This document shows positions 1,131 through 43,461 of a stretch of DNA of 64,000 bases, piece after piece. The stretch spans positions 310,001 to 374,000 of the forward strand of contig NW_003314317.1 in the NCBI RefSeq assembly GCF_000143415.4, in the 5' to 3' direction. The stretch is from Selaginella moellendorffii. Lineage: Eukaryota > Plantae > Lycopodiophyta. Below the pieces are notes generated by a model that did no database searches, was not told where the DNA came from, and was given only the letters and a program-made list of their open reading frames with translations. The position numbers were made by a program, and so were the translations under genes. Numbering within the stretch: the stretch's first letter is position 1; each line of letters starts with the position of its first letter.

Positions 1131-1940
1131 GACCCGGGGCTTGTGAATGTACAGTTTTTTACGATGCGACGACAACGTTATAGTAGGATTTTAACCTAGT
1201 AACCGACATCCCCGACTCTTCTATGATGCTATGATGGCTGAGCATGGTGTCAGTGCCTCTAGCCTACGTTGTAAGTTTTTGCGAAACAGGCGGCGCTGAC
1301 ACCAGCTCAGGTGCATTCGTGGTTATTATCGTCTGGACAAGTCTAGCTTTGGGCCGGTCTCACTGTGCCTCTCCAGTTCCCGGCACGGCACTCGTATGGC
1401 ATCAATAAGGTCGCGTTTCTGACCGGAACATGTCCTGAGAGATATCAATGTTTCGGTTACGAAAGCTGGGCTGGTGAAGTAGCCACTGCCGGAGGAGAGC
1501 TTCAGCGCGGTCACTCCGGAGGGACTTGCCAGTGTTGAAGGGGCCTTGCCTGGAAATGCGTTGGTCAGGGCTGGAGTGATCGGGCTCTCTGTTCAAGGCA
1601 GTCCTTGAGATTTGGAAACTTCGAACGTACGGTGTTCGTGGCATCTTCACCTCCTCGAGCTCGATATCTAGATGAGGGGCAGCCGCGCGTGGAAGTCCTC
1701 AGCGCTGGGAACTCCAAGGAGGCATGAGCGTGGCAGAAGTGGAACGGATCTAGCACGATTGGTGTGTGCAGGAAGCACTCTTTTTCCTTTTCTCTGTTTT
1801 GCTTACTATAATATATCTAACGCTTGAAACTAACCAAAACCTAACTAGACCTCAGACCTCTCCACGTGGACAAGTTTGCAACCAAAGTTCTAGACATGGA
1901 GGGAGCTAGAATGCCAAGTTCATCACAATTGCGCTGCCTA

Positions 1941-2430
1941 TCAACATAAGTCCATCAGCATATACCGCGGCGACACATCCTCAAATCGCCTGGGCTCGCA
2001 CCTCCTCACCACGATCTTCTGCACTGCTCCACGGTTCCCATGAAACCTCCATACTCCCGCAACCGTATTCCTTGGTCCACTCCACCAGCTGGTTATACAC
2101 GTCGGGCTCGTAGCAGCTGTTCGCCGAGAAATCCATTTCCCATGGCCTCTCCCGCAGCATGCACATGGTGCTCGAAGCTCCCCAGCCGGACACTCCCGTG
2201 CAAACATCAGAGCAGTAGCAGCAGCAGCAGGACTATTATCACTTCCCTTCCCCGATGTGATTCATCTCTTGCGCATCCAAACAAATCCTGCTCCATACGC
2301 TCCAACTTTCCACGGACGAGCTCGGCCAAACTTGGGCATTTACATCAGCCGCTTGACGTCCCGCTTGACGTCTTCCTGCGGCACACCCTGAAAGCTCCAA
2401 GTTCTCAGCTCCTCGTCGTCTCCGCTGCAA
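1941..2430 (-). pseudogene. Decayed paralog of the 4296-5243 orphan gene
   Basis: Shares EMDFSANSCYEPDVYNQLVEW and VKRDVKR blocks; a ~60-nt DNA block at ~2077-2140 is essentially identical to ~4596-4660; frameshifted. Confidence 0.8.
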
Positions 2431-2469
2431 GCGCTTCCTGGTGATAGCGAAGGATCATCGTCGGGTTTC

Positions 2470-4070
2470 AGGAAAACTCCAGCACAAGATGGCAAAGTTG
2501 GCGGCTTGATATAAGCATCCCGAGCACTTTGAACTCGTGCGATTGCATAGCATCGGTGCACTTGCCCATTTCCAACAATATCCATTTGTCCATCTTGATA
2601 CTAAATCCTTTCTTTGATTGCCAGCGAGCACACCGGTAGACCCAATGAAAGCAAGCCCAGAAAGTCCACCCGGCATCCCTTTCGATGCTGCTGCTTCTTA
2701 GAGCATTATTTTCCTGGTCCCAGTCAACTTCAGAGCCGACCACTCGAGAACCCGGCATATGCTGTAGGTGCAGTGATCGAGGAGCTTGCCTGGCTCGGAA
2801 GAAGAAGACGCAACATCGAAGTATAACTCGACCAGGAAGAGATTGGACCTGGAACTCCTGCCATTCCCAGTGCCTGGTATACTTATCCAGCTCGAGAAGA
2901 AGCTCGTGCTGGCCTGCTGGAAACCAACTCGAGAATACCGTGTCCAACGTGATATAGTCCACTGTTGTTCTCGTAGTCTTTCATGAACTGCGTCACCTCT
3001 CCATAGTGGCGCAAGAGGCCGATCTCTCGGGACAATTGGCCACCGCCTCCTCAGTCGAATTCTTGAGTCATCCATCCGTTGTAGCTTTCGCATATATCTT
3101 CACAAGATAACAAGCTGACAGTTAACCTGTGGTGGCTGCGACACTGTCTTTGTTGCGGAGAGTGCATGAACGTCGAAGCGTCATAGCCAAATATACATAA
3201 TAAGCAGTACACCTGGATCAGTGAGGTGGCGCTACTGCCACTTAGGATCATGTCATAGAGAGCATATATACTTTACATCTTGCCAATTCTCTCGCGTTCT
3301 CTTCCCGGTGCAAGGTCCAGATGAGAAGTGGAGAGAGTTCTGCCTCCTCGTCCCAGTTCGACGCGTGAGCCCTCGTCTTGAGTGAAAAGGATTTCGCATT
3401 CGTTCTTCTCTTTGAGCTACTCGCTCTTCAAAACCTTCCCGTGTTGCCTGTTTTGCAGTGAGGAGAAGCCAAGAAGGCTAGCGTTAGCTGGACCAAATAT
3501 TGCTTCCTTTTCTTCCTCTTGGATGTATCCGGGACAACGTCGAGCTTCCTCTTTGGTTGAAACGAAAGGTTGGTATGCGTCCATTCCAAACTCTGCAATG
3601 CCAGTGCCACGGTGCTTCTCTTCAATAACTCTCTTGTATGGAGAGCAAATTCTTACAGTGTCGTGGGCTGTGCTCAAACGCTTTGCGTGAGATATTGAGC
3701 TTTCCAAGTGAGCAGGTGGATTCCAAAGGACGACATCCTTCGATCCCCAAAGCCTTCCTCTGGCTATGTCAGAAAACATGATCAAAGGCAAGCTTTTTTT
3801 TTCACTCACATTGCAACTTTCCGCCAAAGAAACAAACAAATTCACCATAAGAACTCACGAGTGTTCGAAGTTACCTGTGATTTGGATCTTGGATGATCGC
3901 CTGGAAGAGACTCTGCGCATTTGCCAGATCCCACTTGACAGGGCATCTTTGTAGAGCTTCGGGCTCCAGCTCCATTGAGCCATGATCTGCAGCAGGTATT
4001 GGCACATTTCTCAAATGGAGATTGGTCATTGCTTCAGACGGCCTAGACGTAGTGATCATGCACCACATTA
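2470..4070 (-). pseudogene. CABIN1: Fragmented CABIN1 (calcineurin-binding protein 1, HIRA complex) pseudogene
   Basis: Frame-hopping segments in plant CABIN1 order: AQSLFQAIIQDP, KDVVLWN, CSP..KRVIE, NLSFQPKRK, LFLVELYFDVASSS..CTYSICRVLEWSAL, FWACFHW. Confidence 0.7.
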
Positions 4071-11630: not shown

Positions 11631-14029
11631 GTGATCACCAGCGGTGACCCAGCATCAAGTGTTCCCGAGTATGATGCACCTGTACTCGAAGAGGATGACG
11701 AGCATGACTTGCAAGGAACTCCAGATGTAGCTAATCTTCTCTTGCAGCCGGTTGCTCCAATCGAGCTGGAGGATTCGTCCTCGCCAGCACCACCCTTGCA
11801 GCTCGAGGCAGTTCTCGCTAGCAGTCACGCGGCAGCGTCAAGTGTTCCCGAGTATGATCTACCACCATTACCTGTACAAACCCATGATTTGCAAGAGGTA
11901 ACTCAGAGAGCTTAGATGGTTTGCCTGGAACCGCACCAACCTTCTCTTGCAGCTAGAGGCGGTCATGGTTGGCACTGTGGATTCAGTTCGGTATACTTCT
12001 CTTTGTGGCAAGACACTTGCAATCGACGACGACAACGACGACAACGACGACAACCTGAGCTGGGAGGATATCCAGAGCTTCTCTCGGACCTGGACATTCC
12101 CGTCGGTGCAGCCACCGTCCAGAGCCGAATTGCATCTGGAGGTGGAGGAACTTAAGAAGCTAGTTGGAGAGTGGACTTGGAAGCTACCGACCACTCTTCA
12201 GTCGATAAAAGAAGAAATGTGGAGTAGGCTTTTGAACGCGGGCTTGGAGGACGTCCCAGGAATTATGGGAAGAACTCAAAAACTTCCTGGGGTGGCATCG
12301 ATTCCCAGTTATCAGTTCCCGACGGATGCTTCTGGAGGCAGCGCCAGGTCCTCCTATCTTCGTCTCCAACGAGAATGGATCTTCTCTGTTCCGCTGGGTG
12401 GATCGCTGCATAGCTCCACTGTGCGCACAACAAGATGGAGAAGAACAAGCTTCAGTCTTTTGGCAGAGGTTGAGAGGCGATGGCACCAGCAGCGTGAGAA
12501 AGCACAGGAGGCCTCCAGACAAGAATAGTGAAGGACAAGAACCTTCTGGCAGCAATGGCCGAGGAGTCATCCTACAAGGTATGTCTCTGTTGACAGGAAT
12601 TAGATATGTATTCGTACTAAGATCTACACTGAACAGGTGCTAAAGCGTCATGCAGCAGCAGGATCTCGAAAGTTGTTGAGGCAAGCTGATGTTTCATCGA
12701 CACCAGCTTCAGTCTTTTGGCGGAGCTTGCAAGGTGATGGTGTGGGAATGCACAGGAGGCTTCCATACAAGAATAGTGAAGAACTTGCAGCAGCAATGGC
12801 CGACAAGTCATCCTACAAGGTATGCCTCTGCTGACAGGAAGCAGATATATTCGTACTATATGCTGGATGGACATTGAACAGGTGCTAAAGTCCCATGCAG
12901 CCACAGGATTTCCATCTCAGAAGTTACTGGCTGGCGGCACTGGTGACACTAAGGAGGCTAGCAGCAATGCTTCACCACCACCAGCATCGCCACCACCTTT
13001 TATGTGGTGGTGGTTCCCTCGAAGCTTGGGCGAGGATGGTGGGAAGGCCAAGAGGATCAACACCGAAACGTTTCAAGAAGCTGAAGAGACTTCATTATCG
13101 ATCTCTCAGAGTTTAGTGTATGACGTCGGGGTGAGCAGCGGCAGTGCCAGTGATTTCATTGAGTTATTTGAAGGAGAAGGCATTAGCAGCAGTGATGCCT
13201 TCCTGAACTCGCTGTTGGAAGGCGAAGGTGGCAGCAGCAGCAGCAATGCGTATCTTCAGCTGGCTTCCTCCAATGGTCTCAACTTGCAAGCGACGGCTGT
13301 GGCGGCAACTCCGCTGCTTCTTCCAATCCTTGCCGGGCTGCTGGTTGCGCTGCTCCTCCTCTTCTTTCTCTACTTCCTCTTGGGGTGGGGGAGGAGGAAG
13401 AGAGGGCTCCTGCCTCACTGAGTTCCAGCTTTCGATGCAAATGCATCAGGATGTGCAGTGGACGGGATCAAGTTGTCGCAGGCATGGCTAGGTACTTGGA
13501 TCAAAACTTGAAGCCGGTGGCTTAACACTCCGTGACCCCCATCGGGAGTGATAAAACTTTGGTGGCAGGTTTTCATCGGCTGGAGAGAAGGTGGCTCTAG
13601 CGTCATCAAGGCAAGAAGTGAGCGGAGATATCTTACAAAACAGAGGTTGCTGGTGGTTCTGGAGCTTTGTCTGGTCATACACAACTTTCTATACCAATTG
13701 ATGGTGTAAGTGCAAGCTAGGAAGAAAGATCATATACTGAGTGTTTGTAGAATTTAAACATTGCTGATTCAGAAAAACAGTTTTTTGTTTTCTTCGAGGC
13801 TTGGTGGGAAGCAAAAAAAGTTGCATGACTAGAAGTAACACTTGGATGGCAAGATGAGTTACTACCCTATGTGAGAGGTAAATGGAAGAAAGCACAGTTA
13901 CATTGCTTGTGAAAGGATTCGTGCAAAGCCTTCTCTTGTGCGTCTCTTCCTGTCTCCAGTCTTTGCTCACTTGGTTATGGCCTGAAAGATGAACGAAAAA
14001 AAGAATAGCTCTTAACCAGTGAGCGAGAT

Positions 14030-17000
14030 TTCATAGATGGTAGTGCAAGTGTTAACATTATTAAATGCTCAGTATACAAAATGATGGGACTTGGACCAAT
14101 TTAATTAGTATCCTTTAAAGTCAAAATGACTAATGACAAAAGTGTGTAACCATTTGGAACCATCCACAACATCCTAATCAAGATCAACAATCAAAAGTTC
14201 AAAGTGACTTTCATCATATTCAAGATGGATAAAGAATATCGTTCTTATGAAGTATTTCTTGGATGAACTTAGCTCAAGATAGTTAATGTTGTCATATACT
14301 GGCAGAAGAGCATAATTGCCTTTGGAAAGCATCAAAAACCCCCTTGAATCTCCATAAGTACAACAAAGAAAATTCCAAAGAAATTCTGACCAAATATTAT
14401 TCAACACTACAATTGGAATGAATGCCTTAACAACTATGAAGAAGTATAAATTATAAAGGCAGACCTAGAATTAAAGTCCCTTGTCGAAGTTGATCTCAAT
14501 TGAGTTATTCCAAAGCCTAATTCAATTTGCTCAACGAAACTTGAAACTCAAGAAACTCAACTTAAGGAAAACTCCTAACTTAAGAAAATTCAACACTTAA
14601 GATTACATCAACAGAGATCAAGAAATAGTATGACCAACTAGGAATTAAACCTGAGCATCTCTAACTAATTTAGCAATAAATCAACCTCAAGGAAGAACTA
14701 CAAAAAGGCTCTTAACTCAAACTAATTCTCAATCTTGAAGAACCAACTAAAGAAATCAGCTCAAGAACCAAAGATGAACCATGGAAGTTTCATATCACTA
14801 GAGATCTAGATCACATCTTTAGAGATAGAGCAATTGACATTTTAAAGAAGTATAAAGATATTTTTGCTTGGTCTTACATAAATTTGAGAAGAATCTCTCC
14901 CGAGATCTGTATACATCAAATTGAACTTCTTCTTCAGACTGTACTACGGAAACAATCAACATACCAAATGAACCTCAACATGCAATTGAAAGTCAAAGAA
15001 ACACTTGATAAACTCAAGCAAGTCGGTTTCATTTACCCAATCCAAAATCTAGAATAGTTATTACCACTAGTCATTGTTTTTAAGAAGAACAATAAACTCA
15101 TGATCCATCTTAACTACAAAAAGCTCAATAACACCATATGGAAAAACACATTCTCAATTCCCTTTTCTAATGAGATTTTTGACACAATTGTGAGATACAA
15201 AATATACTCATTCCTTGACAGTTTCTAAGGATACAATTAAGTTTATATTGCACCTAAAGATTTGTACAAGATAGCTTTCATTAGTCTATAAGGCACTTAT
15301 ATGTATATCTATATATGCCATTTGATTTTTTTAACACACCATTTACTTTCCAAAGAATTATCATTGACACTTTTAGAGAATACCTTACCAGATTCATGTG
15401 AGTTTGCATAGATAACTTCAGTGCTTTCAACAGCAAAGAACACCATCTTTACTATCTTGAGAAAGGCTTTATCAGATATCATTGCCTTGAATCTTGAGAA
15501 ATGCAATTTCTTCCCTGAAGTCTGGAGTTCTACTTCGATGTGTCATTTGCAAAGAAAGCATCCTCATTAACAAAGACAAGACTTTCATTATCACCAATAT
15601 GCAACATCCAACAAATATCGCCAAACTTTGAACTTTCCTTGGCAAAATAAGATACCATCGACAATTCATCAAAATTATACAAAGATCACTAAACCACTCA
15701 CCCAGCTCTTCAAGAAGAATCAAGTCTATAAATGGACTCAAAAATGTTAAAAACCTTTCAACACAATTAAGAATTCATTAACAAAAACTTTAATATTTGT
15801 TTAACAAAATTGGAGCAAAGATTTCAACATTCAAGTCGACACCTCCAACTATGCAATTAGAGTGATTCTTTCACGATAATAAAAAAATTACAAAATTAAC
15901 CAATCTACTACACAAGTCAAAGACTCAATTCAACTTAGATGAACTACACCACCACAGAAAAAGAAGTTCTTGGAATGGTTTACACACTCTAGAAATTTTG
16001 ACATTACCTTCTCGGCAACAAAGTAAAAATCATGATCGACTATAAAACACTTCTATACCTTTTTAACAAAACCATCCTCAACACCAAAATTGCCTAATAG
16101 TTCTTACTCCTTCAAGAATATAACTTCAAGATCATTTATAAGCCCAACAAATAACACAAACAAGCTGACCACTTTAGCCATATTATGATAGGTGAACAAC
16201 CAAAGTATAACGAGGATAACTTCCCCAACTCCAACATCTTGTAAATCCATACTTCATCAACCTAGATACAAGACATCTACCACTACCTAACAACAATGAA
16301 AATACCAAACTAATACATTACTTCTGACCAACACAAGCAATTCATTTTAAAGATAAGACCATATTCAGTCATGAGAGGAAGACTATACAAGAAAAGATGA
16401 GACAATGTATTATGAAGATGTGTACAACCTAAAGAAACTCAAGATTTACTTGAAGAAGCTCATTGTAGATAAGCAAGAAGACACTTTGCAAAAGAAATCA
16501 CAACTCAAAAAATTTTCCAAGCTAAACTTTAGCGGCCAACACTCTAAAATGATTCAGCAAAATTTTGTTATGAATATAACATTTATTCAAGAACCAAGCA
16601 TGTGCCAAAAATGTAGAATCAAGGACTTCATCCAACAACTTCTCTCAAACCACTTTAGCAATTTTGTAGAACCACTTACAACAAGTTCAAAATGAAACAA
16701 ATATATCCTCATAACTACTAATTACATAACAAAGTGGGTTGAAGCTCAATTAATAAATGCTGCAATAGGGAAAAACACAGTAAAGGTCATCTATAAAAAC
16801 ATCATCACAAGGAACAGTTTACCTCAAGAATTTGTTATAAATCGAGAAACACACTTCATTAACAAGACCACCAATATTTTAACTCAAGAATTCACAATCA
16901 AGCATAAGGCTTTAACACTATACTATCCTCAAGGAAATGGTCAAACCTACAAACAAGACCCTACAAAATATATTCAAAAGGGATCATGAAGATAAATAAA

Positions 17001-17400
17001 AAAGACTGGGACAATCGTATCCACAATGCCCTTATCAAACTATTTATAAGCTTTTAACAAATTTGACATCATTTAAGCTTGCTTACAGCTTGACACCACT
17101 TAAGTACATCATTCTTTCATTGCGAATGGCAATACTCTATGTGATCAACCAAGAAGAATCAGTGACCAATGATAGAAAAGCTTAACAAAAAACAACTATA
17201 AGCAATTTGGACACTTAAAACCATTCAAGCTAAAAGAAAAGCTAACCATGACAAAAAAAGACAACTCAAGAAAAGTGAAGAATTCAAGGTTAGAGATCAA
17301 GTTTTATAATTTCAAGGAAATATAGAGAAAATCAACTCAAAGATACAATCAAGATGGGAAGGACAACATTTAAACCCTATGGATTTTTTCTAAAATTGTT
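14030..17400 (+). mobile_element. Highly decayed Ty3/gypsy (non-chromovirus type) pol remnant; LTRs not identified, boundaries approximate
   Basis: Stop-riddled motifs in gypsy order: FAWSY..ISPEICIHQI (~14865), YSFLDSF*GYN*VYIAPKD (~15205), VDTSNYAI (~15835), NYTTTEKEVLGMV (~15942), YITKWVEA (~16725), YYPQGNGQ (~16921). Confidence 0.85.
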
Positions 17401-18859
17401 TTCTTTAATTACTTATAACTTCCCACTGGTGAAGAGTGATTGACATTAATTCCATGCATGAAGGAAATCCACTAAAGTGTATCAAGGTACTTGAGAACTA
17501 CAATAGTGGATTTTTTTTTACAAATGAGCAATGTGATTGACGAAGCTAAGCTGCAATTCAAGTTTTTGATCTCCACACTAGAGATGTGTAAGTCCACAAC
17601 TTTTGCCAGTAAAGCAATTATGATTCTCTATGATGACTTGTAATACAAGACACATTGCAAACTACCTCTATGACAAGCTTATCAAGGAACTTCATATCAC
17701 AATGACAATGATCCAAGATAGCCTCAAATGCAAAACCTCATCCCTACATTGCAGCACTCATTCTAAAGCTCAACACCACCATTTTACTACAAATCAAAGA
17801 GACAACAACAAATAATAGCAATAAAAGATTGAGGAAAGCCACAAACATAGAGACATTATAAACACGAAGAAAAGGGGAATGTGCTTAAAAAATATGAGAC
17901 AATTTCCCATTAACAGTAAATTATCATTAGGATCCGTCCCCACAAAATAAAGAAAATCATCCTTAAAGCAATATTGAAAATGTAAATACTTATATAACAA
18001 GTCATCAATAAATAATGCAAAATTCTCAAACTTATTATAAAGCCTTTAGCCTCACTAGGACTCAATAAATTTGTCACATTAGGCTTGGCTTTGGGGTGAC
18101 CTTTGAAGTGTTGAGGTAAGTCATATATAACATGTTTATAGTGTGAGTATACACTTTCATATAACCTAGTAGAAAGCATCACATGATTGGGGAGAAATCT
18201 AGATAACTACACTCCCTTCCAACTTCTTTATGCATTAATGCTGTGCATCCAATTTAGCTCAGGCAACTAGCATTGAAGGCCTAAATTCCACTTTGCAGCT
18301 CCAACCAGCTCTTGGAGCTCAAGGAGACTAGAGAGCATGCAGCCCTGCACAATTGACTATACCAGCAATAACTCATTTGTCAGCAAAGGAAGACACATGG
18401 GTCAACTTTTCAGACAGGGATCTCATCTGGCTTTAAAATATCTGAACCCATCAACCAAAGCTAGAACCAGCTTGGAGCGGCCCATTTCAGGTGAAAAGCA
18501 TCACTGGTGCAAAGTTTATTTTACGTTCAAGTGATAGATGAATCCCTTCAACAGGGTTCATCTTCAATGCTATTACATATAACAGCAGCAACATACACAT
18601 AGAGGTTATCTAGTTCTTCATTTTTGCTTCACCACGCAGCCCCATCATGAAAAGTCTCAAAAAAAGCTCATGCATCTATGAGTTTTATTCATATCAAAAC
18701 ACTTCTAACAAGTCCCCTCTTCTTCCTAATGGGTGGAGTAGCGTATTGCTCTAACGTGCCTTTTTTCACAACATTCAGAGTGCGGATATATGGGGATATT
18801 CCCTCGAGATGCATATGTGGATGAGCTCCGGATACTTCTCTTCTATGTCCAGCTTGGCC

Positions 18860-35196: not shown

Positions 35197-37921
35197 ATGT
35201 TTCTTCAGTGGAAGAGACTGTGGAAGGCGCTAGTGCGGAAGCTCAGGCGAAAGCTAGGGATGGATCGCGCTCGAGTGGCGGCAGCTTCTCTTGCGGCGGC
35301 AATGGATCTGAAGCAGCCGGCATTGCCGATCTCTTTCCCGCTCACTTCTTTGGATCAGCTCACGGATGATTCCGTGTTCCAGAGCTTCCATTTCCCATTC
35401 CAGCAATGCTCGGTGCCGCTGGCGCTGCAGGGAGGGAAGAAGGAGAGGAAATCCAAGCTCTTGGTGTGCCACGACATGAAAGGAGGCTACCAGGATGATA
35501 GATTCGTGCAAGGCGATGGCAATTACAATGCTTACTCGCTCTGGCACTGGCAATGCATTGATGTTTTCGTGTATTTCTCGCACTCCTTGGTCACTATTCC
35601 TCCTCCCTGTTGGATCAACGCTGGTCACAAGCATGGAGTCCAGGTAAGAAACTTCACCATTCTTTGGCATCCATTTTTCTGACGAGATTATATCGCAGGT
35701 CTTGGGAACTTTCATCACGGAGTGGGATCAAGGGGCTCAAACTTGCAAGTTGCTTCTGGAATCCAAGGATTCGGCAAGAATGTATGCGTCTCGGCTAGCA
35801 AAAGTTGCTCGGGAGTTTGGATTTGATGGATGGCTGGTGAGCAAACAATCTTTTCTTCCCCTTTGTCTTATAGAAACGTTTTTGGTTGTTTCAGCTAAAC
35901 ATTGAAAACACTGTTCCGGTGGAGCAAATCGACACTCTCGTGGTGTTTGTATCGGAGCTCACCAAAGTCATGCACGACCTTGTTCCGGGCTCGCTGGTGA
36001 TATGGTTGGATTGATAGTTTTCTTGCTTTCTTTGGTACTCACTTTCCATGAACAAGGTATGATGCAGTTACTGTGGATGGAGAACTAAAATGGCAAGACA
36101 TGCTAACAGAGAAGAACAAGCGCTTCTTCGATGCTTGCGATGGGATTTTCATTAACTACACATGGAAGGTGTGTATATCATACTTATAAGCAAATCGTGA
36201 AATATCTCATTCTTATTTCTTGTTCCAGAGGGACTACGCAGCGAAATCGGCGAAAGTGGCTGGCGATCGAGCCTCCGACGTTTACATGGGAGTGGACGTT
36301 TTCGGGAGAAACACTTTCGGAGGAGGAGGATTTCAGGTAAGCAACGATGTTTGCATTGCGTTTCCAGAGACCAACTCTGGTAACTTTTGCTTGTCTAGAG
36401 CAACGTTGCTTTGAAAGTAGCGCTGGAGGCCGGTGTTTCGGCAGCATTGTTTGGTCCCGGGTGGGTCTACGAGAAAAATATTGGGCCAACTTTCGAAGAC
36501 GCACAAATCAGGTACCTACGAGTTTAACTCGGTCTTTTTCTCTCTTTTTGTTTCTCACTCGGAACCTCCTTGTGGAAGGTTTTGGGCTTCTATACACAAT
36601 GCCTGGCCCGTATCACACAGATATCCTGTTACGCTGCCTTTCTTCTCGGATTTCAGCCAGGTAGTAGTAAAAATCTTTGCGAGCAAAGTTTTCATGACGT
36701 TTGTTTTGCCAGGGTTTCGGGAAAGCCCTCTATGTAGATGGTGTCCAGGTATCAGATTCTCCCTGGAGTAATATTTCATGCCAAGCTCTTCAAGTATGGT
36801 TTCCTCTTCTATTGTTTTTTGTGACGATAACAATCTTGGTTTTGGTAGCCGCTTTTGCTTGGAGCGCTAGATCCAGAGTTTGAAGTTACTGTAAGGTAAA
36901 AGTTTCGCTGAGAAAACGAAGTTATCCCAAAGATTGTTCACATTCTTATTTTCAGATCAGTGGATCGAGTTTACAGCGGTGGATCGAGCCTCCGTTTCCT
37001 CGGAAAGCTCAAAGCTTCCGACGTTCGCATCACTAAGCTGTATGATCCACACCTGGTTCTCGCAAATCCTACTCTCTCCATTGACTTCTCGGTAGCGTTC
37101 TCAAGCCTCGCAAGCTCACGTTGGATCTTAACAGTGTTGCGCTGCAGGTCATGTCCAAGGAAAACGCAATCTTTTACCTCGTTCTTAAGTTGCAAGGCCC
37201 TGGAGGAATTCGCGTAGTGTTTTTCTCGAACGAGCACAGCGGCACCTCAGAGAAGAAGATGAATCAAAGCTCCTCCAGTTTCAGTGTCTTTGAGCCACAC
37301 CGGACAGTGACGAAGAGCTCCGGTACCTCGGATGACGCCTGGAATGTGAGGGAGTACCAGATCGAGGTGGAACAAAACTCCGTGGTAACCGATATCTACG
37401 GCATGAGCACCACCAGGAACGCTCCTCTGGACTTCGAAGAGATCACAGGCACTCTGGCGGCCGAAAGCTCCTCCGATACACAGACCTCTTTTCGGCTTAC
37501 CTCGTCTTCACTGACGCGGAAGTTCTTGCCGGACGCTACTCAACCATACGAGCTTCACTTGGGCCACCTGAGGATCACAGCAGAACCGCCAGCGCCGCCG
37601 ACAGTTTCGAGCTTCCGAGCCGACGATCTCAAGTGGTCCACAAGCCCCGATGGCAATAAGCTCGTCAGCCTCACGCTCAAGTGGGAGTTTGGAGGTGGTT
37701 TCCAGGCCGATCGCTGCAACACATACGTCGAGATGGTGGGAAAAGAGACGACGAGCAAAGCCAAGTACCTTGGAGCTGCTTTCGTCGACGCCTTCTACGT
37801 GGATTCGCTTCTAGTTCCTCACGAGACTTCCAGCTTGGTTTTCCGCCTCCAGCCTCGCAACGCTGCTGGTTTTCACCAGGGCTGGAATGAATCTCCCACG
37901 CTCACTGTCGAAGTCCGTTGA
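35197..37921 (+). CDS. ENGase: Cytosolic endo-beta-N-acetylglucosaminidase (GH85), multi-exon; start codon uncertain
   Basis: LLVCHDMKGGYQDD, YFSHSLVTIPP, HKHGVQVLGTFITEW, GFDGWLLNIEN, DVYMGVDVFGR. Confidence 0.95.
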
Positions 37922-37940
37922 AAAAAAAAAATAAAGTACT

Positions 37941-40766
37941 CTAGGCGAGTAGCGCCTGCTGGAGGATATCGTCTTCGACCGCCAGCCTCTCCAACACCAT
38001 TTTGGCTCGTCTCCTCGACACCTCCTTGATCTGCCAGTCGCCGAGCATGCCAACCAGCTCTCTCACGTTGCAACAATCCGGTCCCGCTACAACGACCCTT
38101 CCAAGCCTGCTCCTCGCAGCAATCTCCTGGAGCTTGTCCGCGGCCCAGACACTGTCCTCTTCCCGGCCCGCCATCGCCAGCATCCTCATCAAAAGCTCCA
38201 CGCAGTCGAGCGAAGATCCGTCGCCACCGTCGTTACTCTGTTCCTTCTTCGTCTTCTCGAGAATCTCCAGAGCTTTCGCAAAGTGAGCCACGGCCTTGTC
38301 TGGATCGCTGGCCTCCACGCCTCTTCCCGACTGGTAGCACCTCCCGAGCTCTACGTGAGCGCTCGCGCATCCTTCTCGAGCAGCCTGCTTGTAGAGCCCA
38401 AGCGCTCGCTTCTCGTCTCTGGCTATCCCGAGGCCGCTCTCCAGGCACATTGCGAGCTTCCACCTCGCTGATCCTCCTCCCGCGCAAGACGAGGCCTTGT
38501 AGTACCAGAAGACCGCCTGCTCAAACTCGTGGCCGGGACCGATCCAGTTCGCCATCAAGTCCCCTGCGATCTCTGCGGCCGCGCCGAATCCATCTTCGTG
38601 TTCTAGTTGCTCCACGGAGCTCGCTAGCCAGAGCACGAAGCTGTCCATTGGAAACGGCCAGAACCCGGGTCCTTTCTCCTTCTCGAGCATCGATATGAAG
38701 AGTCCTTCGCCAGCTTCTCGTTGTCGCTGCTGTTTCTCGTTGTGCATGAGAATGACGTCGACGAGGAACTTCACTCCAAGGTGGCTGGCGAGCTGGCTAA
38801 AGTCGGACATCGTAAGAGGAAGGATATCTTGGTGCTGCCATGACTGCCTTCTCGCAATGATCGCCTTAAGGCTCCTCAGCGCCAGGCAAACCTGCGTGAA
38901 GGACAGCCTCTGCTCTGGTTCGTGGCTCCAGCATCTACGAGCAAGCACCGCCAGGAACGCCGGAGAATGCCCAAGGATGTCGGGCCTGCCTCTCTCGACG
39001 CTCACCAGTTGAAAGAGCTGCGACTCGGTCGTGAGTTGATTGTAATCGGAGAATGGCCTGCGGCTCGAAAGTATCTGGAAGCAGAGCATACCGAAGCTGT
39101 AGACGTCGGACTTCTTCGTGAACGTAGCCTCGCCGGAGGAACTGGCTTCCTGCTGCTCAAAGACTTCCGGAGCTTGCCAGAACGGTGGCACATCATGCCG
39201 CTGCTGCTGACTCTCGAAGGTTTCCTGGTCGTCGTCGTCAGAAGCTACGCTCTGCAACCACGAGGATCCTGCCAGCCTCGTCTTTGGCAATCCATAGTCG
39301 GTGATTTTCACTTGGATGAACTCGTCCAGCTCGTGTTTGCTGCTCGAAGATCTTCTCCGCCGCCTCGAGTCGGTCGTGCTGGGAACGAGTAACACGTTGA
39401 AAGCGTTGAGACACCGGTGGAGAACCCCTCTCCTGTGTAGAAAAGCCATTCCTTCCGCTACTTGGAGCATGATCTCGACGGCTACTGGGAGTGGAACAGG
39501 ACCTTGGCCGAGATTTAAAACGCTGTCCAGATCTTTCCGCAGCAGCTCTGTCCATAACCGGCATTCTCCAAATTCCTCGTCGTCGTTTGTTATGCTCGCA
39601 AAGAGAAGCTGAGCCAGGCGAGGATGGCGGAGACTCGCGAGCACCGACACTTCGTTCCAGAAGGACTCTCGGCTGAGAAAAGCCGTTACTTTCAGCGCGG
39701 CAGGAAATCCAAGAAACTCGGACTTGTAAACGATGCCAAAGAATCCTGTACCGAGTAGCAATTTCTCCGTTCTTCTGCTGGTGATATTATCCAATGCCCA
39801 GGATTCTCTCTGGTGAATCCTCTCGATGTAGGACTCAAACCCGTCGTCCTCGGCATCCAGCTTGGCTACGAGATAGCTGGTAATCTCCGCCACCCGATTC
39901 TCCTTCCTGCTCTTCGAACTAAAAACAGACAGGCCCCTAAAAAAGAAGCCGTCGTGCTTTTGCTTCATCTTCCGGAGCTTGTCTAGCAGATATCTTCGGT
40001 CCAGCCGCATTGCCAGGATCAATCCACGGTCCGCTTCCGCATTGAGTGTTTCCTCTGCTATCTCGAAAGTTCTTTCTATCATCCAGTATGGGACGTGGTG
40101 CTGATAGCTGCCGGTACCCAGCCTCTTCTTCTGGTGCTTGAAGGAATCGTCTCTCCCTGCTCTGAACTGCGCGAGGACAACTTCCATCACTGACACACAC
40201 CATTGCTGGTGCTGGTACTGCTGCGCAACGAAGATCCCATCGTCCGCTGCATAAATGATTGCTTTCATCAGCCACGAGTCCTCAGCGTCTTCCTGTCCGG
40301 ACGACACCCAGCAGGACACTAGAACCTCAGCGTCATGAGTGACTTTGGCTATTTCCACGGCCGCTGTTCTGCATTGCTCGCATGAAGTCGAGTCCAAGCT
40401 CGCCATCTCGTCAACCAAGTTCCTCAGATTGTCATGGAAGCTCTTCAAGAAAGGACAAAAGAGGAAAAGTCAGCCAGGAGGCAAAACAAACAGTACCTGC
40501 AGGTCGAGGAATCTGCACTGTGCGTGATTGAACCTCAAACTCGCGGTGCTCGCGCCAACGATCGAAGAGCTCCCAGCGGTGCTGCTGTTACACAGCCTGA
40601 TGAGCCTTTCCAGTACCTGAATTGCTTGCTCCACGATTCTGATAGAGCTGCTCTCGCTGGACGTGGCAGAATCATACAAGGAGGAGCCCGAATACGAAGA
40701 AGGCATGGCCTTGATCATCAGCTTCCGCCTTGCTATTTGCATCAGAACTTTGGCTGGCAGATCCAT
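37941..40766 (-). CDS. MLKL-like protein: N-terminal 4-helix-bundle (HeLo/DUF1221-like), pseudokinase, C-terminal Sel1-like repeats; exons 40766-40497 and 40442-37941
   Basis: RFNHAQCRFL..EIAKVTHDAEVLV..WLMKAI; GTGFFG, AALK, HRCLNAFNVL (no catalytic Asp), DYG, APE, SDVYSFG; Sel1-like ARWKLAMCLESGLGIARDEKRALGLYKQAAREG and AHVELGRCYQSGRGV. Confidence 0.85.
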
Positions 40767-41183
40767 TCTCTCTCCGCAACTGAAAAGCTGGAGTGCAGAA
40801 AAAGCCACAGCTCACGCCTGAGCAGTCCGCAACAGCAACATTCCTCTTGGCTTTTCAGTGGTCCTGGCAGTGAGGCACCCGATTTTCCAAGCCCGTGTTG
40901 GAACGCTTTATACCTCCAGATTTGAATATTTGTGTTTGGTGAGCCGAGCGTCCTCGTCGCAGCCAGGTACGCTCATGCTTGCTTCAGATCCGGACTTGGC
41001 AGTAGCCTTGCGTGGAGTTCACATCGAGATGAATAGTGGAGTCCACCACCTCGACATTAACGCCGAGGCCTTCTGGGTGACAGGGACCTTATCTTGAGCC
41101 GAAAGAACAACCTGTTCCCGTCCGCAAGAAGTTTCTAAACCCAACCGCGGGCTCACTTGGTAACGGACATCTCCCTCTCCGGA

Positions 41184-42986
41184 TCATGGTCGATGGAGCT
41201 TTGTAGAATTAGCGACGTACACACTCGAGAGTGCAACGTAAGCAGCAGCCGAGTTTCGCGAGTTGAGTTGCACCGCTTGTTTCGCGGCACGCTCCGCTCT
41301 CGAGACGTCGCCGTGCATCTTGCAAGCCCCCAGCAGAGACATCCATTTGAAGTCGTCCACCACCGACGCAGGCATTTTCTTGATGAAATCCTCGGCCTCG
41401 AGCAGCCACCCCGCCCGTCCCAGCAGGTCCGCAAGGCAGCCGTAGTGCTCCTTCTCGGGAACTATCCAGTGGTCGCTCATGAGGCCGAAGTAGTAGCAGC
41501 CTTGCTCGACACGGCCAGTGTGGGTGCAACCGTCGAGCATTCCCATGAAAGTTCTACCGTCAGCTGCAATGCCTTCCAGCAGCATCATCTGAAAGAGCTC
41601 GAGAGTGCTGGCAGGGTCGCTGTGTACTGCGAAGGCTGCTATCAAAGTGTTCCAAGTCACGATCATTGCCGACGAATCCCAAGCCACGGAAGAAGAGATT
41701 GCGAGGAAGATCTCCCAGGCCTGTTTCAGCTTCCCAGACTTCCCATACATGCTCAGCAACGCATTCGCCACCAAGGTGTCTGAGATAGCTCCCAAAACCA
41801 CCACCCGCTTGTGAAGAGCTCGACCAACTTCCAGGAACGATGAGTCGGCAGCACAAGCGTTGAGAAGAGCCACAAGAGTGACTTTCCTCACGGGATTTCC
41901 TTCATGCTCCATCTTCCTGAAGAGCATCACGCTGGAAGCCGAGTCACCATTGTCTGCACAGGCACCGATCATCGCTGTCCAGCAAGCGGAGTCCCTGTTC
42001 TGGATTCCAGCAAAGACTTCTCGAGCGCCATCCAAGTTCCCACATTTTCCATACATGCTGACGATGGTAGTGGCGACTGCGGTGTCGTGGCTCAATCCCT
42101 TTTCGGTCGACTGGGAGTGGATCGACCTGCCGTGAATGAGAAACTGGGGAGATTGACAGGCCTGGAAGACACCCAGGAAAGTAACTTTGCTCGGCCTGTG
42201 CTGTCCATCGAGGAGCATTCTCCAGTAAACTCCAAGTGCCTCTTTGTGATGCCCATTTTGGGCATATGCTGCGATCATAGTGTTCCAAGTGACAGTGTTC
42301 TTCTCGGGCATGACCAGGAAGACGTTCGAGGCGCTTCTCAAGGAACCAACCCTTCCATACATCGCCACAAGCGCGGTGCCCACTACGACGTCGATTTCCT
42401 CCAGCTCGATCCCTGTTCTTGATCTTGAGTCGTCGTAGAGGGAGTGGATCCATATCCCAAGGCGGAGATCGTTGCAGTTGGACAGAGCAGCCAGGAATGT
42501 CACGGCATTCGGCGCTACTCCCTGGAGCTGCATCGATCGAAAGAGAAGGATCGCTCCTTCGCTACTGCCGGGCGATATTTCCCTGGATTCCGAGTGCGCG
42601 GAGATGAGAGCGGTCCAGGCAACCACGCCGGGCGCCGCGATTGCATCGAACACAACGCGCGCGCTGCGAATATCACCGCATTTGCCATACATGTTAAGGA
42701 TCGCCGTCGCGAGCTGTGAATCGCGGCAATACCCGGATTCCTGCGCACACCTGTGGATTACCCGGCCCTGCTCCAAATCCCGGGCTGCCGCGGCCGCATT
42801 CCCGAGCGCCACGAACATCCGGCGGTCGGGAGCTATCCCTTCGAGCTGCATCTGGCGGAAGAGCGCCATCGCCTCCCTCGATCGGCCACGATCCACAAGC
42901 ATTCCAAGAATCCGCGTCCATGTCGTCGACGGAGGAGGAGAAGCGAGCGACGTAGAACAAGAAAAATCCCCGCTAGGGTTTTGCAT
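41184..42986 (-). CDS. Intronless PLS-class PPR protein ending in an E domain, no DYW
   Basis: Repeated TAILNMYGKCG / VTWNTMIAAYAQNG motifs; EHYGCLADLLGRAG, WMSLLGACKMHGD, AAYVALSSVY. Confidence 0.93.
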   Translation of the reverse strand: MQNPSGDFSCSTSLASPPPSTTWTRILGMLVDRGRSREAMALFRQMQLEGIAPDRRMFVALGNAAAAARDLEQGRVIHRCAQESGYCRDSQLATAILNMYGKCGDIRSARVVFDAIAAPGVVAWTALISAHSESREISPGSSEGAILLFRSMQLQGVAPNAVTFLAALSNCNDLRLGIWIHSLYDDSRSRTGIELEEIDVVVGTALVAMYGRVGSLRSASNVFLVMPEKNTVTWNTMIAAYAQNGHHKEALGVYWRMLLDGQHRPSKVTFLGVFQACQSPQFLIHGRSIHSQSTEKGLSHDTAVATTIVSMYGKCGNLDGAREVFAGIQNRDSACWTAMIGACADNGDSASSVMLFRKMEHEGNPVRKVTLVALLNACAADSSFLEVGRALHKRVVVLGAISDTLVANALLSMYGKSGKLKQAWEIFLAISSSVAWDSSAMIVTWNTLIAAFAVHSDPASTLELFQMMLLEGIAADGRTFMGMLDGCTHTGRVEQGCYYFGLMSDHWIVPEKEHYGCLADLLGRAGWLLEAEDFIKKMPASVVDDFKWMSLLGACKMHGDVSRAERAAKQAVQLNSRNSAAAYVALSSVYVANSTKLHRP

Positions 42987-43461
42987 GGGAGAGAGACGAG
43001 CGAATCTTAGAGAATATCCGCTGAAGAAACTGGCGGTCACGTGTCGCTCTCAAGGCCGTTGGATTGGATGAGGAATATTCCACCACAATTCCACGCGGAT
43101 GGTCTTAATGCCGGCGACCCTGTGCCATACAGAGTGAAGAGAGAGAGAGAAGGGAGAGGAGAGGGCATTAGGGCTTTTGGGCACAGATTTCTAGAGAAGG
43201 CGAGGGCGGCAGCGCTGGAAGGGAGCTAGAGATCGGCCGCTTGCCGACGCTCTTGTGAGCAACAGAATGCCTGGCGATTCGGTTTGTGAAAATCTCTCCT
43301 CTCCTCTCTCAGATTTTAGGTCCATTTCGCTGGCGGCCGCTTGAAATGTGATTTGGTTTGTGCGTGTGCTTGCGTCGCTGCTGTGTGCTTGTTCTTCTTC
43401 CGGAATTTCTGTGGTTTCTAATTCCTTTCCTCTTCGATTTTTTTGCCAGCAGCCCGTTTGT

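What the first reader, a model, noticed from the sequence alone, without database searches (positions are those of the whole stretch)
37941..40766. MLKL-like 4HB-pseudokinase fused to C-terminal Sel1-like repeats
Seen: splicing a 54-nt intron joins RFNHAQCRFL to EIAKVTHDAEVLV..WLMKAI. The kinase keeps the Gly-loop and VAIK-type Lys but has HRC in place of HRD, so it lacks the catalytic Asp. Two to three Sel1-like repeats follow. Known: plant MLKLs are HeLo/DUF1221-pseudokinase immune and cell-death proteins described mainly from seed plants, and kinase-Sel1 fusions are characteristic of Glomeromycotina fungi. Inference: a one-polypeptide sensor (Sel1) - switch (pseudokinase) - executor (4HB) immune receptor in a non-seed plant. 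I do not know this architecture from angiosperm MLKLs.
Basis: partly seen in the sequence, partly recalled or inferred. Interest (0 to 1): 0.8.

Follow-up and report, generated by a model that had tools for sequence, protein, structure and literature searches.

The report
Spikemoss MLKL-like pseudokinase with Sel1 tail
An expressed, evolutionarily constrained gene of the spikemoss Selaginella moellendorffii joins a helical N-terminal region, a dead kinase most like the plant cell-death/immunity protein MLKL, and Sel1 protein-binding repeats in one chain; the layout is real, but the death-domain identity of the N-terminus and any immune role are unproven.

Summary
On the minus strand a two-exon gene (ATG 40766, 54-nt GT..AG intron 40443-40496, stop 37941-37943) encodes 923 aa. 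RNA-like contigs from three independent studies skip exactly that intron. One contig carries exon 1 and all of exon 2, Sel1 part included. The other haplotype is NCBI's uncharacterized LOC112344899, which has the same exon join.

The kinase keeps the Gly-loop, the VAIK lysine, the alphaC Glu and a DYG motif. Its catalytic loop reads HRCLNAFN, so both the catalytic Asp and the Lys two residues on are lost. Its best solved relatives by a wide margin are AtMLKL3 and AtMLKL2. It shares the Lys-to-Asn change and an acidic insert after APE with seed-plant DUF1221 MLKLs. The tree places it as their sister only weakly (76/60).

Two full Sel1 repeats plus a half lie at residues 729-816.

The N-terminal 320 aa is a sequence orphan with no Pfam hit. 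Three weak lines point to an MLKL-type four-helix bundle, and structure prediction stayed at low confidence.

The allele dN/dS of 0.14 argues that the gene is functional. Any immune or cell-death role is inference.

This scan has noted other MLKL-like and kinase-Sel1 genes elsewhere in this genome, including one note of the same layout. Verdict: a new variant of a known kind, of moderate interest.

The parts
40497..40766 (-). Coding exon 1 (residues 1-90, ATG at 40766-40764, ends ...RFLDLQ)
   Evidence: Sequence read; identical in translation to P0001 residues 1-90; covered by spliced contigs
40443..40496 (-). 54-nt intron, GT..AG, phase 0, with an in-frame TGA
   Evidence: Skipped exactly in contigs of X2, X7 and X10 (table 5). 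The other haplotype has a 64-nt intron here.
37941..40442 (-). Coding exon 2 (residues 91-923 plus stop at 37941-37943), one unbroken ORF
   Evidence: Differs from the other haplotype at 33 nt and 11 residues.
39750..40631 (-). N-terminal all-helical region, residues 46-321 (spans the intron); candidate MLKL-type four-helix bundle plus brace
   Evidence: Against: no Pfam hit and no relatives among 1.84 billion representatives. For: bridged-profile hhalign global score 26.1 against at most 10 for about 190 controls; HMMER p of about 0.003, or 0.0007 for the first half; language-model neighbours MLKL_N, MCAfunc, RPW8 and PUB10_N. AF2 pLDDT is 38-62, all helices.
40506..40535 (-). Motif RFNHAQCRFL (residues 78-87), aligned by MAFFT and hhalign with the DUF1221 motif I-Q-I-N-Q-R-Q-C-x-L-L
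40257..40280 (-). Motif DSWLMKAI (residues 145-152), aligned with DUF1221 K-D-W-W-A-K-A-I. The Cys-to-Lys spacing is 66 residues here and 64 in DUF1221.
38838..39749 (-). TKL-type pseudokinase domain, residues 322-625
   Evidence: PF07714 at 1e-30. PDB 6KA4 and 6LBA are the top sequence hits. AF2 pLDDT is 70-89 and VIA-align Z is 29 to RAF kinases.
39396..39419 (-). Degenerate catalytic loop HRCLNAFN: Asp replaced by Cys and Lys replaced by Asn, with the final Asn kept
   Evidence: Seed-plant MLKLs read H-G-[SDEN]-L-N-P-[FS]-N. Bryophyte relatives read HRDLK.
39291..39302 (-). TDYG, the DFG-equivalent with the metal-binding Asp kept
38265..38528 (-). Sel1 repeats, residues 729-816 (two full repeats plus a half)
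   Evidence: Pfam Sel1 at 52-57 bits; alignments to PDB 6OK3, 6DEH and 4BWR
37944..38264 (-). C-terminal tail, residues 817-923, no recognised domain
   Evidence: One search finds only sub-threshold TPR hits here. C-terminal dN/dS is 0.04.
37714..37768 (-). 55-nt minus-strand intron in the 3' UTR, 173 nt downstream of the stop, antisense to the last coding exon of the convergent ENGase gene
   Evidence: table 5: skipped in X2, X7 and X10 with CT..AC on the plus strand, and in X2 on the same contig as exon 2. The plus-strand ORF there is an unbroken Ig_ENGASE1_C domain.

Best explanation
This is a real, expressed and selectively maintained gene of Selaginella moellendorffii. It encodes a divergent relative of plant MLKL proteins that carries Sel1 repeats in place of the serine-rich tail.

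Shown:
- The gene has two exons and encodes 923 aa.
- The central domain is a TKL kinase fold. It keeps every ATP-binding element (Gly-loop, VAIK Lys, alphaC Glu, catalytic-loop Asn, DYG Asp). It has lost the catalytic base (HRD to HRC) and the neighbouring Lys (to Asn), so it should bind nucleotide but not transfer phosphate.
- The closest solved and named relatives of the kinase are plant MLKL (DUF1221) pseudokinases.
- The C-terminus holds 2.5 Sel1 repeats.

Inferred:
- The all-helical N-terminal 320 aa is an extremely diverged MLKL-type four-helix bundle plus brace.
- By analogy with AtMLKLs and animal MLKL, the pseudokinase holds the N-terminal helices in an inactive state until a conformational or phosphorylation cue releases them. 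Candidate phosphorylation sites are the Arg/Ser-rich and acidic inserts in and before the activation segment.
- The Sel1 solenoid then acts as a protein-binding, oligomerising or autoinhibitory module that couples the switch to a partner.

Whether the output is membrane damage and cell death, or a death-independent immune or signalling role as reported for AtMLKLs, is unknown.
For: Gene and expression:
- Spliced contigs from three studies, one of them spanning both exons.
- The same join in NCBI's model for the other haplotype.
- Allele comparison of exon 2: 22 synonymous against 11 non-synonymous changes, dN/dS 0.14 (kinase 0.07, Sel1 tail 0.04, N-terminus 0.21).

Kinase kinship:
- PDB sequence search puts AtMLKL3 (6KA4, 107.8 bits) and AtMLKL2 (6LBA, 101 bits) first, with the next kinase at or below 60 bits.
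- The word search gives DUF1221 kinases at 35-36% identity.
- Catalytic loop H-x-x-L-N-x-x-N and an EQQE/EEQEQ insert after APE are shared.
- The ML tree puts it sister to the DUF1221 clade.

N-terminus:
- The N-termini of bryophyte relatives give sub-threshold Pfam hits to DUF1221 (P0018, 19.8 bits) and MLKL_N (P0006, 18.5 bits).
- A profile bridging these with DUF1221 aligns collinearly with residues 46-321. The score is 26.1. Against it: 100 shuffles with a maximum of 9.9, 40 block shuffles with a maximum of 9.5, the reversed sequence at 6.6, and 53 natural control windows. Of those 53, 52 score 8.0 or less; the exception, at 20.0, lies directly upstream of a related kinase domain.
- HMMER against 5000 shuffles gives p=0.003, and p=0.0007 for the bundle half.
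- MAFFT independently aligns the QC and W..KAI motifs.
- Language-model neighbours of residues 66-200 are all plant four-helix-bundle families.
- The MSA-guided AF2 model has AtMLKL3 as its only full-length Foldseek match (560 columns, TM 0.56 by target).

Sel1.
Against: N-terminus:
- Pfam finds neither DUF1221 nor MLKL_N in it.
- The angiosperm-only profile gives no signal.
- The hhalign signal is unstable when the profile is split into halves or subsets, and HMMER and hhalign disagree on which half carries it.
- AF2 confidence is too low to call a fold: pLDDT 34 from the single sequence and 38-48 with the MSA.
- The Foldseek match to AtMLKL3 is biased by the DUF1221 rows in the MSA.
- Language-model scores of 0.75-0.84 are at lead level only.

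Kinase and tail:
- The sister grouping has only 76/60 support, and it joins two long branches.
- Unlike DUF1221 MLKLs, the kinase keeps the Gly-loop, the VAIK Lys and the DFG Asp.
- The tail is not serine-rich.

Distribution and function:
- No orthologue outside this species was found in 1.84 billion representatives.
- No functional data exist.
Confidence: 0.6

Rival explanations
1. It is a scaffold pseudokinase without an MLKL-type executor. The N-terminal 320 aa is an unrelated, lineage-specific helical or coiled region. The protein acts as a non-lethal signalling scaffold whose Sel1 repeats and dead kinase recruit partners. Only the kinase domain is inherited from the MLKL-related TKL lineage.
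For: The N-terminus has no Pfam hit and no sequence relatives. The DUF1221-only profile gives no signal. AF2 cannot fold it confidently. The ESM Atlas's own model matches only generic helical proteins at TM 0.55 or less. Related kinases occur with many different partner domains, such as PP2C, TPR, jacalin and tandem kinases, so domain shuffling is common.
Against: The collinear bridged-profile match lies well above about 190 controls. The QC and W..KAI motifs have conserved spacing. Every language-model neighbour is a plant four-helix-bundle family. The N-terminal region has the same position and roughly the same length as the bundle plus brace in relatives.
Confidence: 0.3
2. It is an atypical but active kinase. 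A Cys-containing catalytic loop, or another residue, substitutes for the Asp, and the protein phosphorylates substrates recruited by the Sel1 repeats, like the active kinase-Sel1 proteins noted elsewhere in this genome.
For: The Gly-loop, VAIK Lys, alphaC Glu, catalytic-loop Asn and DYG Asp are all intact, so nucleotide and metal binding look possible.
Against: Both the catalytic base Asp and the Lys of HRDLKxxN are replaced, giving HRCLNAFN, in both alleles. The Lys-to-Asn change is the one seen in the dead seed-plant MLKL kinases.
Confidence: 0.05
3. It was acquired by horizontal transfer, or by convergent capture, from a Glomeromycotina-type kinase-Sel1 gene.
For: Kinase and Sel1-like families are both highly expanded in Rhizophagus (PMC8647823). 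An unverified scan note (s1-421633) reports fungal relatives for another Selaginella MLKL-like family.
Against: All close kinase relatives found are plant proteins. The best Sel1 match, P0026, is an active kinase with 11 Sel1 repeats and shares only generic repeat similarity at 30-39%. The gene has a typical short Selaginella intron, and both haplotypes show syntenic plant neighbours.
Confidence: 0.03
4. It is an annotation artefact or a decaying gene: two genes wrongly fused, or a pseudogene.
For: The protein is species-restricted and its N-terminus is an orphan.
Against: Exon 2 is one 2.5-kb ORF running from the N-terminal region through the kinase to the Sel1 part. The spliced contig spans both exons. 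Both haplotypes are intact, with dN/dS 0.14.
Confidence: 0.02

Closest known systems
Seed-plant MLKLs (AtMLKL1-3; DUF1221/PF06760 plus pseudokinase; PDB 6KA4, 6LBA; Mahdi et al., bioRxiv 10.1101/681015)
   Same: The order of a helical N-terminal region of a few hundred residues followed by a TKL pseudokinase is the same. The kinase is the closest solved relative. Both share the catalytic loop H-x-x-L-N-x-x-N without the Asp and Lys, and an acidic insert after APE. The tree places them as sisters, weakly.
   Different: The N-terminus is not recognised as DUF1221 and is about 75 residues longer. The Gly-loop, VAIK Lys and DFG Asp are kept here but lost in DUF1221 MLKLs. The C-terminal serine-rich region is replaced by a roughly 300-aa helical tail with Sel1 repeats. 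The organism is a lycophyte, whereas the family was described across seed plants.
Animal MLKL (MLKL_N/PF22215 four-helix bundle, brace, pseudokinase)
   Same: The overall logic is the same: a helical N-terminus plus a nucleotide-binding dead kinase. MLKL_N clusters are among the language-model neighbours.
   Different: There is no detectable sequence match to MLKL_N. No RIPK3-type partner is evident next to the gene. Animal MLKL has no C-terminal repeat domain.
Bryophyte MLKL-related kinases found here (Sphagnum kinase-PP2C P0006; moss P0018 and Ceratodon P0002 with tandem kinases; P0017)
   Same: Their kinase domains are related (E 1e-25 to 1e-60). Each has an unannotated N-terminal region of about 220-280 aa with sub-threshold DUF1221 or MLKL_N similarity. 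Together these regions form the profile that matches this protein's N-terminus.
   Different: Their kinases keep HRDLK and DFG and so look active. Their partner domains differ (PP2C, extra kinases), and none has Sel1.
Cereal MLKL-type resistance proteins (Pm13; R3AK helper MLKL, bioRxiv 10.64898/2026.08.07.743466)
   Same: These are kinase fusion proteins with an N-terminal four-helix bundle used in immunity. That paper shows bundle-kinase fusions arose several times with different bundle types (DUF1221, MCAfunc, Cbl-N-like).
   Different: They are monocot-specific clades. Some are active kinases and some are paired with NLRs. No Sel1 tail is described. No NLR lies next to this gene.
Kinase-Sel1 proteins (Glomeromycotina expansions; metagenomic P0026) and Sel1 adaptors (SEL1L, DELE1, bacterial LpnE/HcpC type)
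   Same: The Sel1 repeats are genuine, and a kinase fold and Sel1 repeats sit in one chain. DELE1, whose Sel1-like repeats oligomerise and activate a kinase, is among the PDB matches (8D9X).
   Different: Only 2.5 repeats are present here, against 7-11 or more in those proteins. The kinase here is dead and plant-derived. The similarity is confined to the generic repeat consensus.

Membership tests
Plant MLKL (DUF1221-pseudokinase) | N-terminal HeLo/four-helix-bundle domain recognised as DUF1221 (PF06760) | tested here: not met
   There is no Pfam hit at E up to 10, whether the exons are searched separately or P0001:1-330 is searched. hhalign against an angiosperm DUF1221 alignment gives probability 0.9%.
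Plant MLKL (DUF1221-pseudokinase) | N-terminal region homologous to the bundle plus brace at superfamily level | tested here: inconclusive
   The bridged profile scores 26.1 against controls of 10 or less. HMMER gives p=0.003, or 0.0007 for the first half. Language-model neighbours are MLKL_N, MCAfunc, RPW8 and PUB10_N at 0.75-0.84. However, the signal is unstable on sub-profiles and AF2 pLDDT stays under 50.
Plant MLKL (DUF1221-pseudokinase) | Kinase-like domain lacking residues needed for phosphoryl transfer | tested here: met
   The catalytic loop reads HRCLNAFN in place of HRDLKxxN in both alleles. The degeneration is milder than in DUF1221 MLKLs, because the Gly-loop, Lys and DFG Asp are kept.
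Plant MLKL (DUF1221-pseudokinase) | Kinase domain belongs to the MLKL clade | tested here: inconclusive
   6KA4 and 6LBA are the top PDB hits by about 45 bits, and DUF1221 kinases are the nearest named relatives. The tree places it sister to the DUF1221 clade, but at 76/60 support, on long branches, with only 20 rows and no wider kinome sampling.
Plant MLKL (DUF1221-pseudokinase) | Serine-rich C-terminal extension without known domain | tested here: not met
   The tail holds Sel1 repeats at residues 729-816.
Plant MLKL (DUF1221-pseudokinase) | Immune or cell-death activity of the N-terminal bundle; autoinhibited oligomer | not testable with these tools
   This needs expression assays and structural work.
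Animal-type MLKL (MLKL_N PF22215) | MLKL_N domain detectable | tested here: not met
   P0001:1-330 gives no hit. The Sphagnum relative P0006 reaches only 18.5 bits, below the cut-off of 27.
Protein kinase superfamily, TKL type (PF07714) | Kinase fold above the curated threshold | tested here: met
   PF07714 scores 107 bits against a cut-off of 23.1. AF2 pLDDT is 70-89, and VIA-align gives Z 29 at rmsd 2.2 over 253 residues to CRAF.
Sel1 repeat (PF08238) | Repeats above the Pfam gathering score | tested here: met
   Sel1 scores 52.1-57.5 bits against a cut-off of 30.7, in two stretches. PDB Sel1 proteins match at E 4e-25.
Glomeromycotina kinase-Sel1 family | Kinase or Sel1 part specifically related to the fungal family | tested here: inconclusive
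   No fungal protein appears among the hits for the kinase or the tail. However, the word-index search is limited in reach, and no fungal sequences were compared explicitly.

The most novel reading that the evidence does not exclude
This is a single-chain, lycophyte-specific death switch. The Sel1 solenoid binds a partner or a pathogen-derived ligand. The nucleotide-binding but catalytically dead kinase transmits that event. A very diverged MLKL-type four-helix bundle then executes membrane damage or immune signalling. On this reading the kinase, which has lost the catalytic loop but keeps the Gly-loop, Lys and DFG Asp, would be a living intermediate between the active bryophyte kinases and the fully degenerate seed-plant MLKL pseudokinases. 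That would date the origin of the plant MLKL lineage to before the seed plants.
Probability: 0.2. Interest if true: 0.75.

Novelty: new variant of a known kind. Interest (0 to 1): 0.5.

Why it matters
Plant MLKLs were described as a seed-plant family with a fixed layout of DUF1221, pseudokinase and a serine-rich tail. A lycophyte relative with a partly degenerate kinase and a Sel1 protein-binding tail would push the lineage back beyond seed plants. It would also show one step in how the kinase died. And it would offer a compact, testable case of how a recognition or oligomerisation module can be wired onto an MLKL-type switch.

Together with the other MLKL-like and kinase-Sel1 genes that this scan has noted in the same genome (unverified notes), it suggests that Selaginella explores many architectures of this cell-death or immunity module.

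The limits are clear. The protein is an orphan of one species, its N-terminal fold is unproven, and no function is known.

Tried and rejected
- Pfam on each exon and on P0001:1-330 for DUF1221 or MLKL_N found nothing.
- phmmer of the N-terminal 320 aa against the PDB found nothing.
- The same query against 1.84 billion representatives found only itself plus two repeat proteins (P0024, P0025). Their scores come from summing many copies of one short chance match, so I rejected them as spurious.
- A short match of residues 193-212 (RLGTGSYQHH...) to the Gly-loop start of DUF1221 kinases has probability 0.9%, and I treat it as chance.
- AlphaFold2 on the N-terminus alone gave pLDDT 34, which is unusable.
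- AlphaFold2 with a 15-row alignment still gave a low-confidence N-terminus. VIA-align on that model sees only the kinase.
- The structure search of the ESM Atlas's own model gave only generic helical matches at TM 0.55 or less.
- The kinase tree with the 20 sequences available leaves the backbone unresolved.
- The best Sel1 match (P0026) shares only the generic repeat consensus.
- Paper searches for MLKL with Selaginella, bryophytes or lycophytes found no plant-biology paper on non-seed-plant MLKLs.
- The bacterial-type promoter/terminator scan is irrelevant to a plant gene.

The exons were handled separately by reference. Full-length analyses used the database protein P0001, the other haplotype, which differs at 11 residues.
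Full report
**Observation**

The region holds a minus-strand gene. Reading the minus strand shows an ATG at 40766. The open frame ends ...RFLDLQ at 40497 and is followed by GT. An AG at 40444/40443 is followed by SFHDNL.... The intron is therefore 54 nt (40443-40496), phase 0, and it carries an in-frame TGA. Exon 2 (40442-37941) is a single 2.5-kb ORF. The product is 90 + 833 = 923 aa.

The word-index protein search returned one match for the N-terminal part: NCBI 'uncharacterized protein LOC112344899 [Selaginella moellendorffii]', 923 aa (P0001). It is 96% identical over that part and has the same exon join. P0001 lies on GL377571.1 with the same neighbours: MYB, PPR, this gene, a convergent ENGase, a GHMP kinase and a P450. 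The window is therefore the other haplotype of the same locus.

The exons were searched separately by reference, and P0001 served for full-length work.

**Expression**

The runs offered are labelled RNA only as a guess. Their contigs settle the point.
- Contigs of X2, X7 and X10, from three studies, skip 40443-40496 exactly, with canonical GT..AG on the minus strand.
- A 5103-nt contig of X7 carries 37769-40442 joined to 40497-41100 and beyond. Exon 1, the kinase and the Sel1 part are therefore on one assembled transcript, and exon 2 has no further intron.
- X1 holds the unspliced form with a 10-nt insertion in the intron. That insertion matches the 64-nt intron of the P0001 allele, so X1 is DNA or unspliced RNA of the other haplotype.

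Contigs cannot give transcript ends or levels. The X7 contig also runs on into the upstream PPR gene, so contig continuity alone is not proof of a single mRNA. The single ORF of exon 2 makes that point moot for the kinase-Sel1 link.

**Constraint**

The two haplotypes differ at 33 positions in exon 2, 22 synonymous and 11 non-synonymous. dN/dS is 0.14 overall: 0.21 for the N-terminal part, 0.07 for the kinase and 0.04 for the C-terminal part. Both alleles are intact. The counts are small, but they argue for a functional gene, Sel1 tail included.

**Kinase**

Pfam gives PK_Tyr_Ser-Thr at 1e-30. The alignment shows the following residues.
- Kept: LGTGFFG (Gly-loop), AALK (VAIK lysine), an alphaC Glu, DYG (DFG Asp present) and APE.
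- Lost: the catalytic loop reads HRCLNAFN, so both the catalytic Asp and the Lys of HRDLKxxN are replaced.

This is a nucleotide-binding-competent pseudokinase by sequence.

Evidence for kinship with plant MLKLs:
- In a sequence search of all PDB chains, the two best hits are AtMLKL3 (6KA4, 107.8 bits, E 4e-30) and AtMLKL2 (6LBA, E 4e-28). The next kinases (HCK, BRAF, RIPK1) are at about 1e-15.
- The word search finds angiosperm DUF1221 kinases at 35-36% identity as the nearest named family. Alongside them are bryophyte proteins with other partners: Ceratodon with five kinase domains, Sphagnum kinase-PP2C, and TPR and jacalin fusions.
- Seed-plant MLKLs read H-G-x-L-N-P-x-N in the catalytic loop, and they share an acidic EEQEQ-type insert after APE with this protein. 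The bryophyte relatives keep HRDLK and DFG. The Lys-to-Asn change looks like a shared derived character.
- The ML tree (LG+C20, 20 rows) places the Selaginella kinase as sister to the DUF1221 clade. Support is only 76/60 and both branches are long, so the grouping is neither shown nor rejected.

**N-terminus**

This is the weak point of the MLKL reading.

Negative results:
- No Pfam family matches it.
- phmmer against the PDB finds nothing.
- An exhaustive phmmer over 1.84 billion representatives finds only the protein itself and two repeat proteins whose scores are artefacts of summed repeats.
- An angiosperm-only DUF1221 profile gives nothing.
- AlphaFold2 on the single sequence is unusable (pLDDT 34).

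Three weak lines nevertheless point the same way.

First, a bridged profile.
- The N-termini of two bryophyte relatives give sub-threshold Pfam hits: P0018 to DUF1221 (19.8 bits) and P0006 to MLKL_N (18.5 bits).
- A profile combining five DUF1221 domains with four such N-termini aligns collinearly with residues 46-321 in hhalign global mode, scoring 26.1.
- Controls score far lower. Residue shuffles gave 3.2 +/- 2.3 (maximum 9.9), block shuffles a maximum of 9.5, and the reversed sequence 6.6. Of 53 natural control windows, 52 scored 8.0 or less. The one exception, at 20.0, was the segment just upstream of a related kinase domain in P0021.
- Leave-one-out scores for accepted members are 18-39.
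- HMMER with the same profile gives p=0.003 against 5000 shuffles, and p=0.0007 for the bundle half.
- MAFFT independently aligns RFNHAQCRFL with the DUF1221 motif IQINQRQCxLL, and DSWLMKAI with KDWWAKAI, at nearly identical spacing (66 against 64 residues).
- Against this, the signal vanishes or shifts when the profile is split, and hhalign and HMMER disagree on which half carries it.

Second, the language-model neighbours of residues 66-200 are all plant four-helix-bundle families: PUB10_N/DUF7792, MCAfunc, MLKL_N and RPW8. Their scores of 0.75-0.84 are, by the tool's own calibration, leads only.

Third, AlphaFold2 with a 15-row alignment gives an all-helical N-terminus (helices 38-60, 72-104, 112-137, 144-156, 160-185, 209-259, 267-301). 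Its only full-length Foldseek match is AtMLKL3, over 560 columns with TM 0.56 by target. All other matches cover the kinase alone. But the pLDDT there is 38-62, and the alignment contained DUF1221 rows, so this is not an independent test.

I put the chance that the N-terminus is an MLKL-type bundle plus brace at about 0.6-0.7.

**C-terminus**

Pfam Sel1 scores 52-57 bits against a cut-off of 30.7. Bacterial Sel1 proteins, SEL1L and DELE1 align to residues 729-816, giving two full repeats and a half. Residues 626-728 and 817-923 have no recognised domain.

The best non-self match, P0026, is an active kinase with 11 Sel1 repeats from a metagenome and shares only the repeat consensus. No close paralogue of this tail was found. 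Nothing supports a specific link to the Glomeromycotina expansions, and the kinase's relatives are plant proteins.

**Context**

No kinase or NLR partner lies next to the gene.

The convergent ENGase ORF stops 19 nt from this gene's stop codon. The transcripts carry a 55-nt minus-strand intron (37714-37768) that lies 173 nt downstream of the stop, inside the antisense of the ENGase's last coding exon.

Notes of this scan, which are unverified, report many MLKL-like genes in this genome. They include active kinase-Sel1 genes immediately upstream of small MLKL-like genes, and one other note of a HeLo-pseudokinase-Sel1 fusion. I could not read those loci. The exhaustive search shows that none of them shares this N-terminus at detectable identity.

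**Mechanism**

Shown: an expressed, constrained, single-chain protein with a helical N-terminus, a catalytically dead but probably nucleotide-binding TKL domain of the MLKL-related lineage, and a short Sel1 solenoid.

Inferred, by analogy with AtMLKLs (autoinhibited tetramer with the bundle buried by brace and pseudokinase) and with animal MLKL:
- The pseudokinase acts as a conformational switch.
- The Arg/Ser-rich insert before DYG (residues 448-460) and the acidic activation-segment insert (residues 491-507) are candidate regulatory sites.
- The Sel1 part binds a partner, oligomerises or autoinhibits.

The output (death, or death-independent immunity or signalling) is unknown.

**Novelty**

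The gene model is public but uncharacterised. I found no paper on MLKL-type proteins of lycophytes or bryophytes. The founding description covers seed plants. A 2026 preprint shows that bundle-kinase fusions arose repeatedly in monocots.

I rate this a new variant of a known kind, of moderate interest. The claim is limited by the unproven N-terminal fold and by the restriction to a single species.

Noticed in passing
window 37714-37768 (minus strand) and 37121-37921 (plus strand): A 55-nt GT..AG intron on the minus strand lies in this gene's 3' UTR, 173 nt past the stop codon. It sits inside the antisense of the last coding exon of the convergent ENGase gene (Ig_ENGASE1_C domain). The two stop codons are only 19 nt apart. 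The arrangement implies overlapping antisense transcripts and possibly control of the MLKL-like mRNA by nonsense-mediated decay.
   Followed up: partly
window 40767-43040: The X7 transcript contig that carries both exons of this gene continues about 1.8 kb beyond 41100, into the upstream same-strand PPR gene (41184-43040). This could be read-through, overlapping UTRs or an assembly merge.
   Followed up: no
window 14001-18000: A 4-kb stretch has GC 0.32, against about 0.5 elsewhere, and a strong AT skew. It has no ORF of 120 aa or more and no tandem repeats. Its nature is undetermined.
   Followed up: partly
P0006 (Sphagnum magellanicum CY35_04G014800), P0005, P0007: These peat-moss proteins join an N-terminal region with a sub-threshold MLKL_N hit (E 1.5e-3), an active-looking kinase (HRDLK, DFG) and a C-terminal PP2C phosphatase domain. 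This is a bundle-kinase-phosphatase layout.
   Followed up: partly
P0002 (Ceratodon purpureus KC19_8G157600) and P0018: This moss protein has an N-terminal region weakly like DUF1221 (through its close relative P0018, 19.8 bits), followed by five tandem kinase domains.
   Followed up: partly
L002 (Logan contig of SRR33208250) 224-3610: The gene for P0017, the closest non-seed kinase relative, is followed on the same strand by two short ARM/PUB-repeat ORFs. This may be one bundle-kinase-ARM gene that was split by the gene caller.
   Followed up: no
P0001 residues 193-212 (window about 40077-40136, minus strand): The short stretch KRLGTGSYQHHIPYW resembles the RRLGNGSQxKEIxW start of the kinase domain of DUF1221 MLKLs, yet it lies about 125 residues upstream of the real Gly-loop. 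The match is not significant (hhalign probability 0.9%) and is probably chance, though a relic of a duplicated module is not excluded.
   Followed up: partly
window 40443-40496 compared with L001 6271-6334: The two haplotypes differ by a 10-nt indel inside the intron (54 against 64 nt). Both forms keep GT..AG and an in-frame stop.
   Followed up: yes
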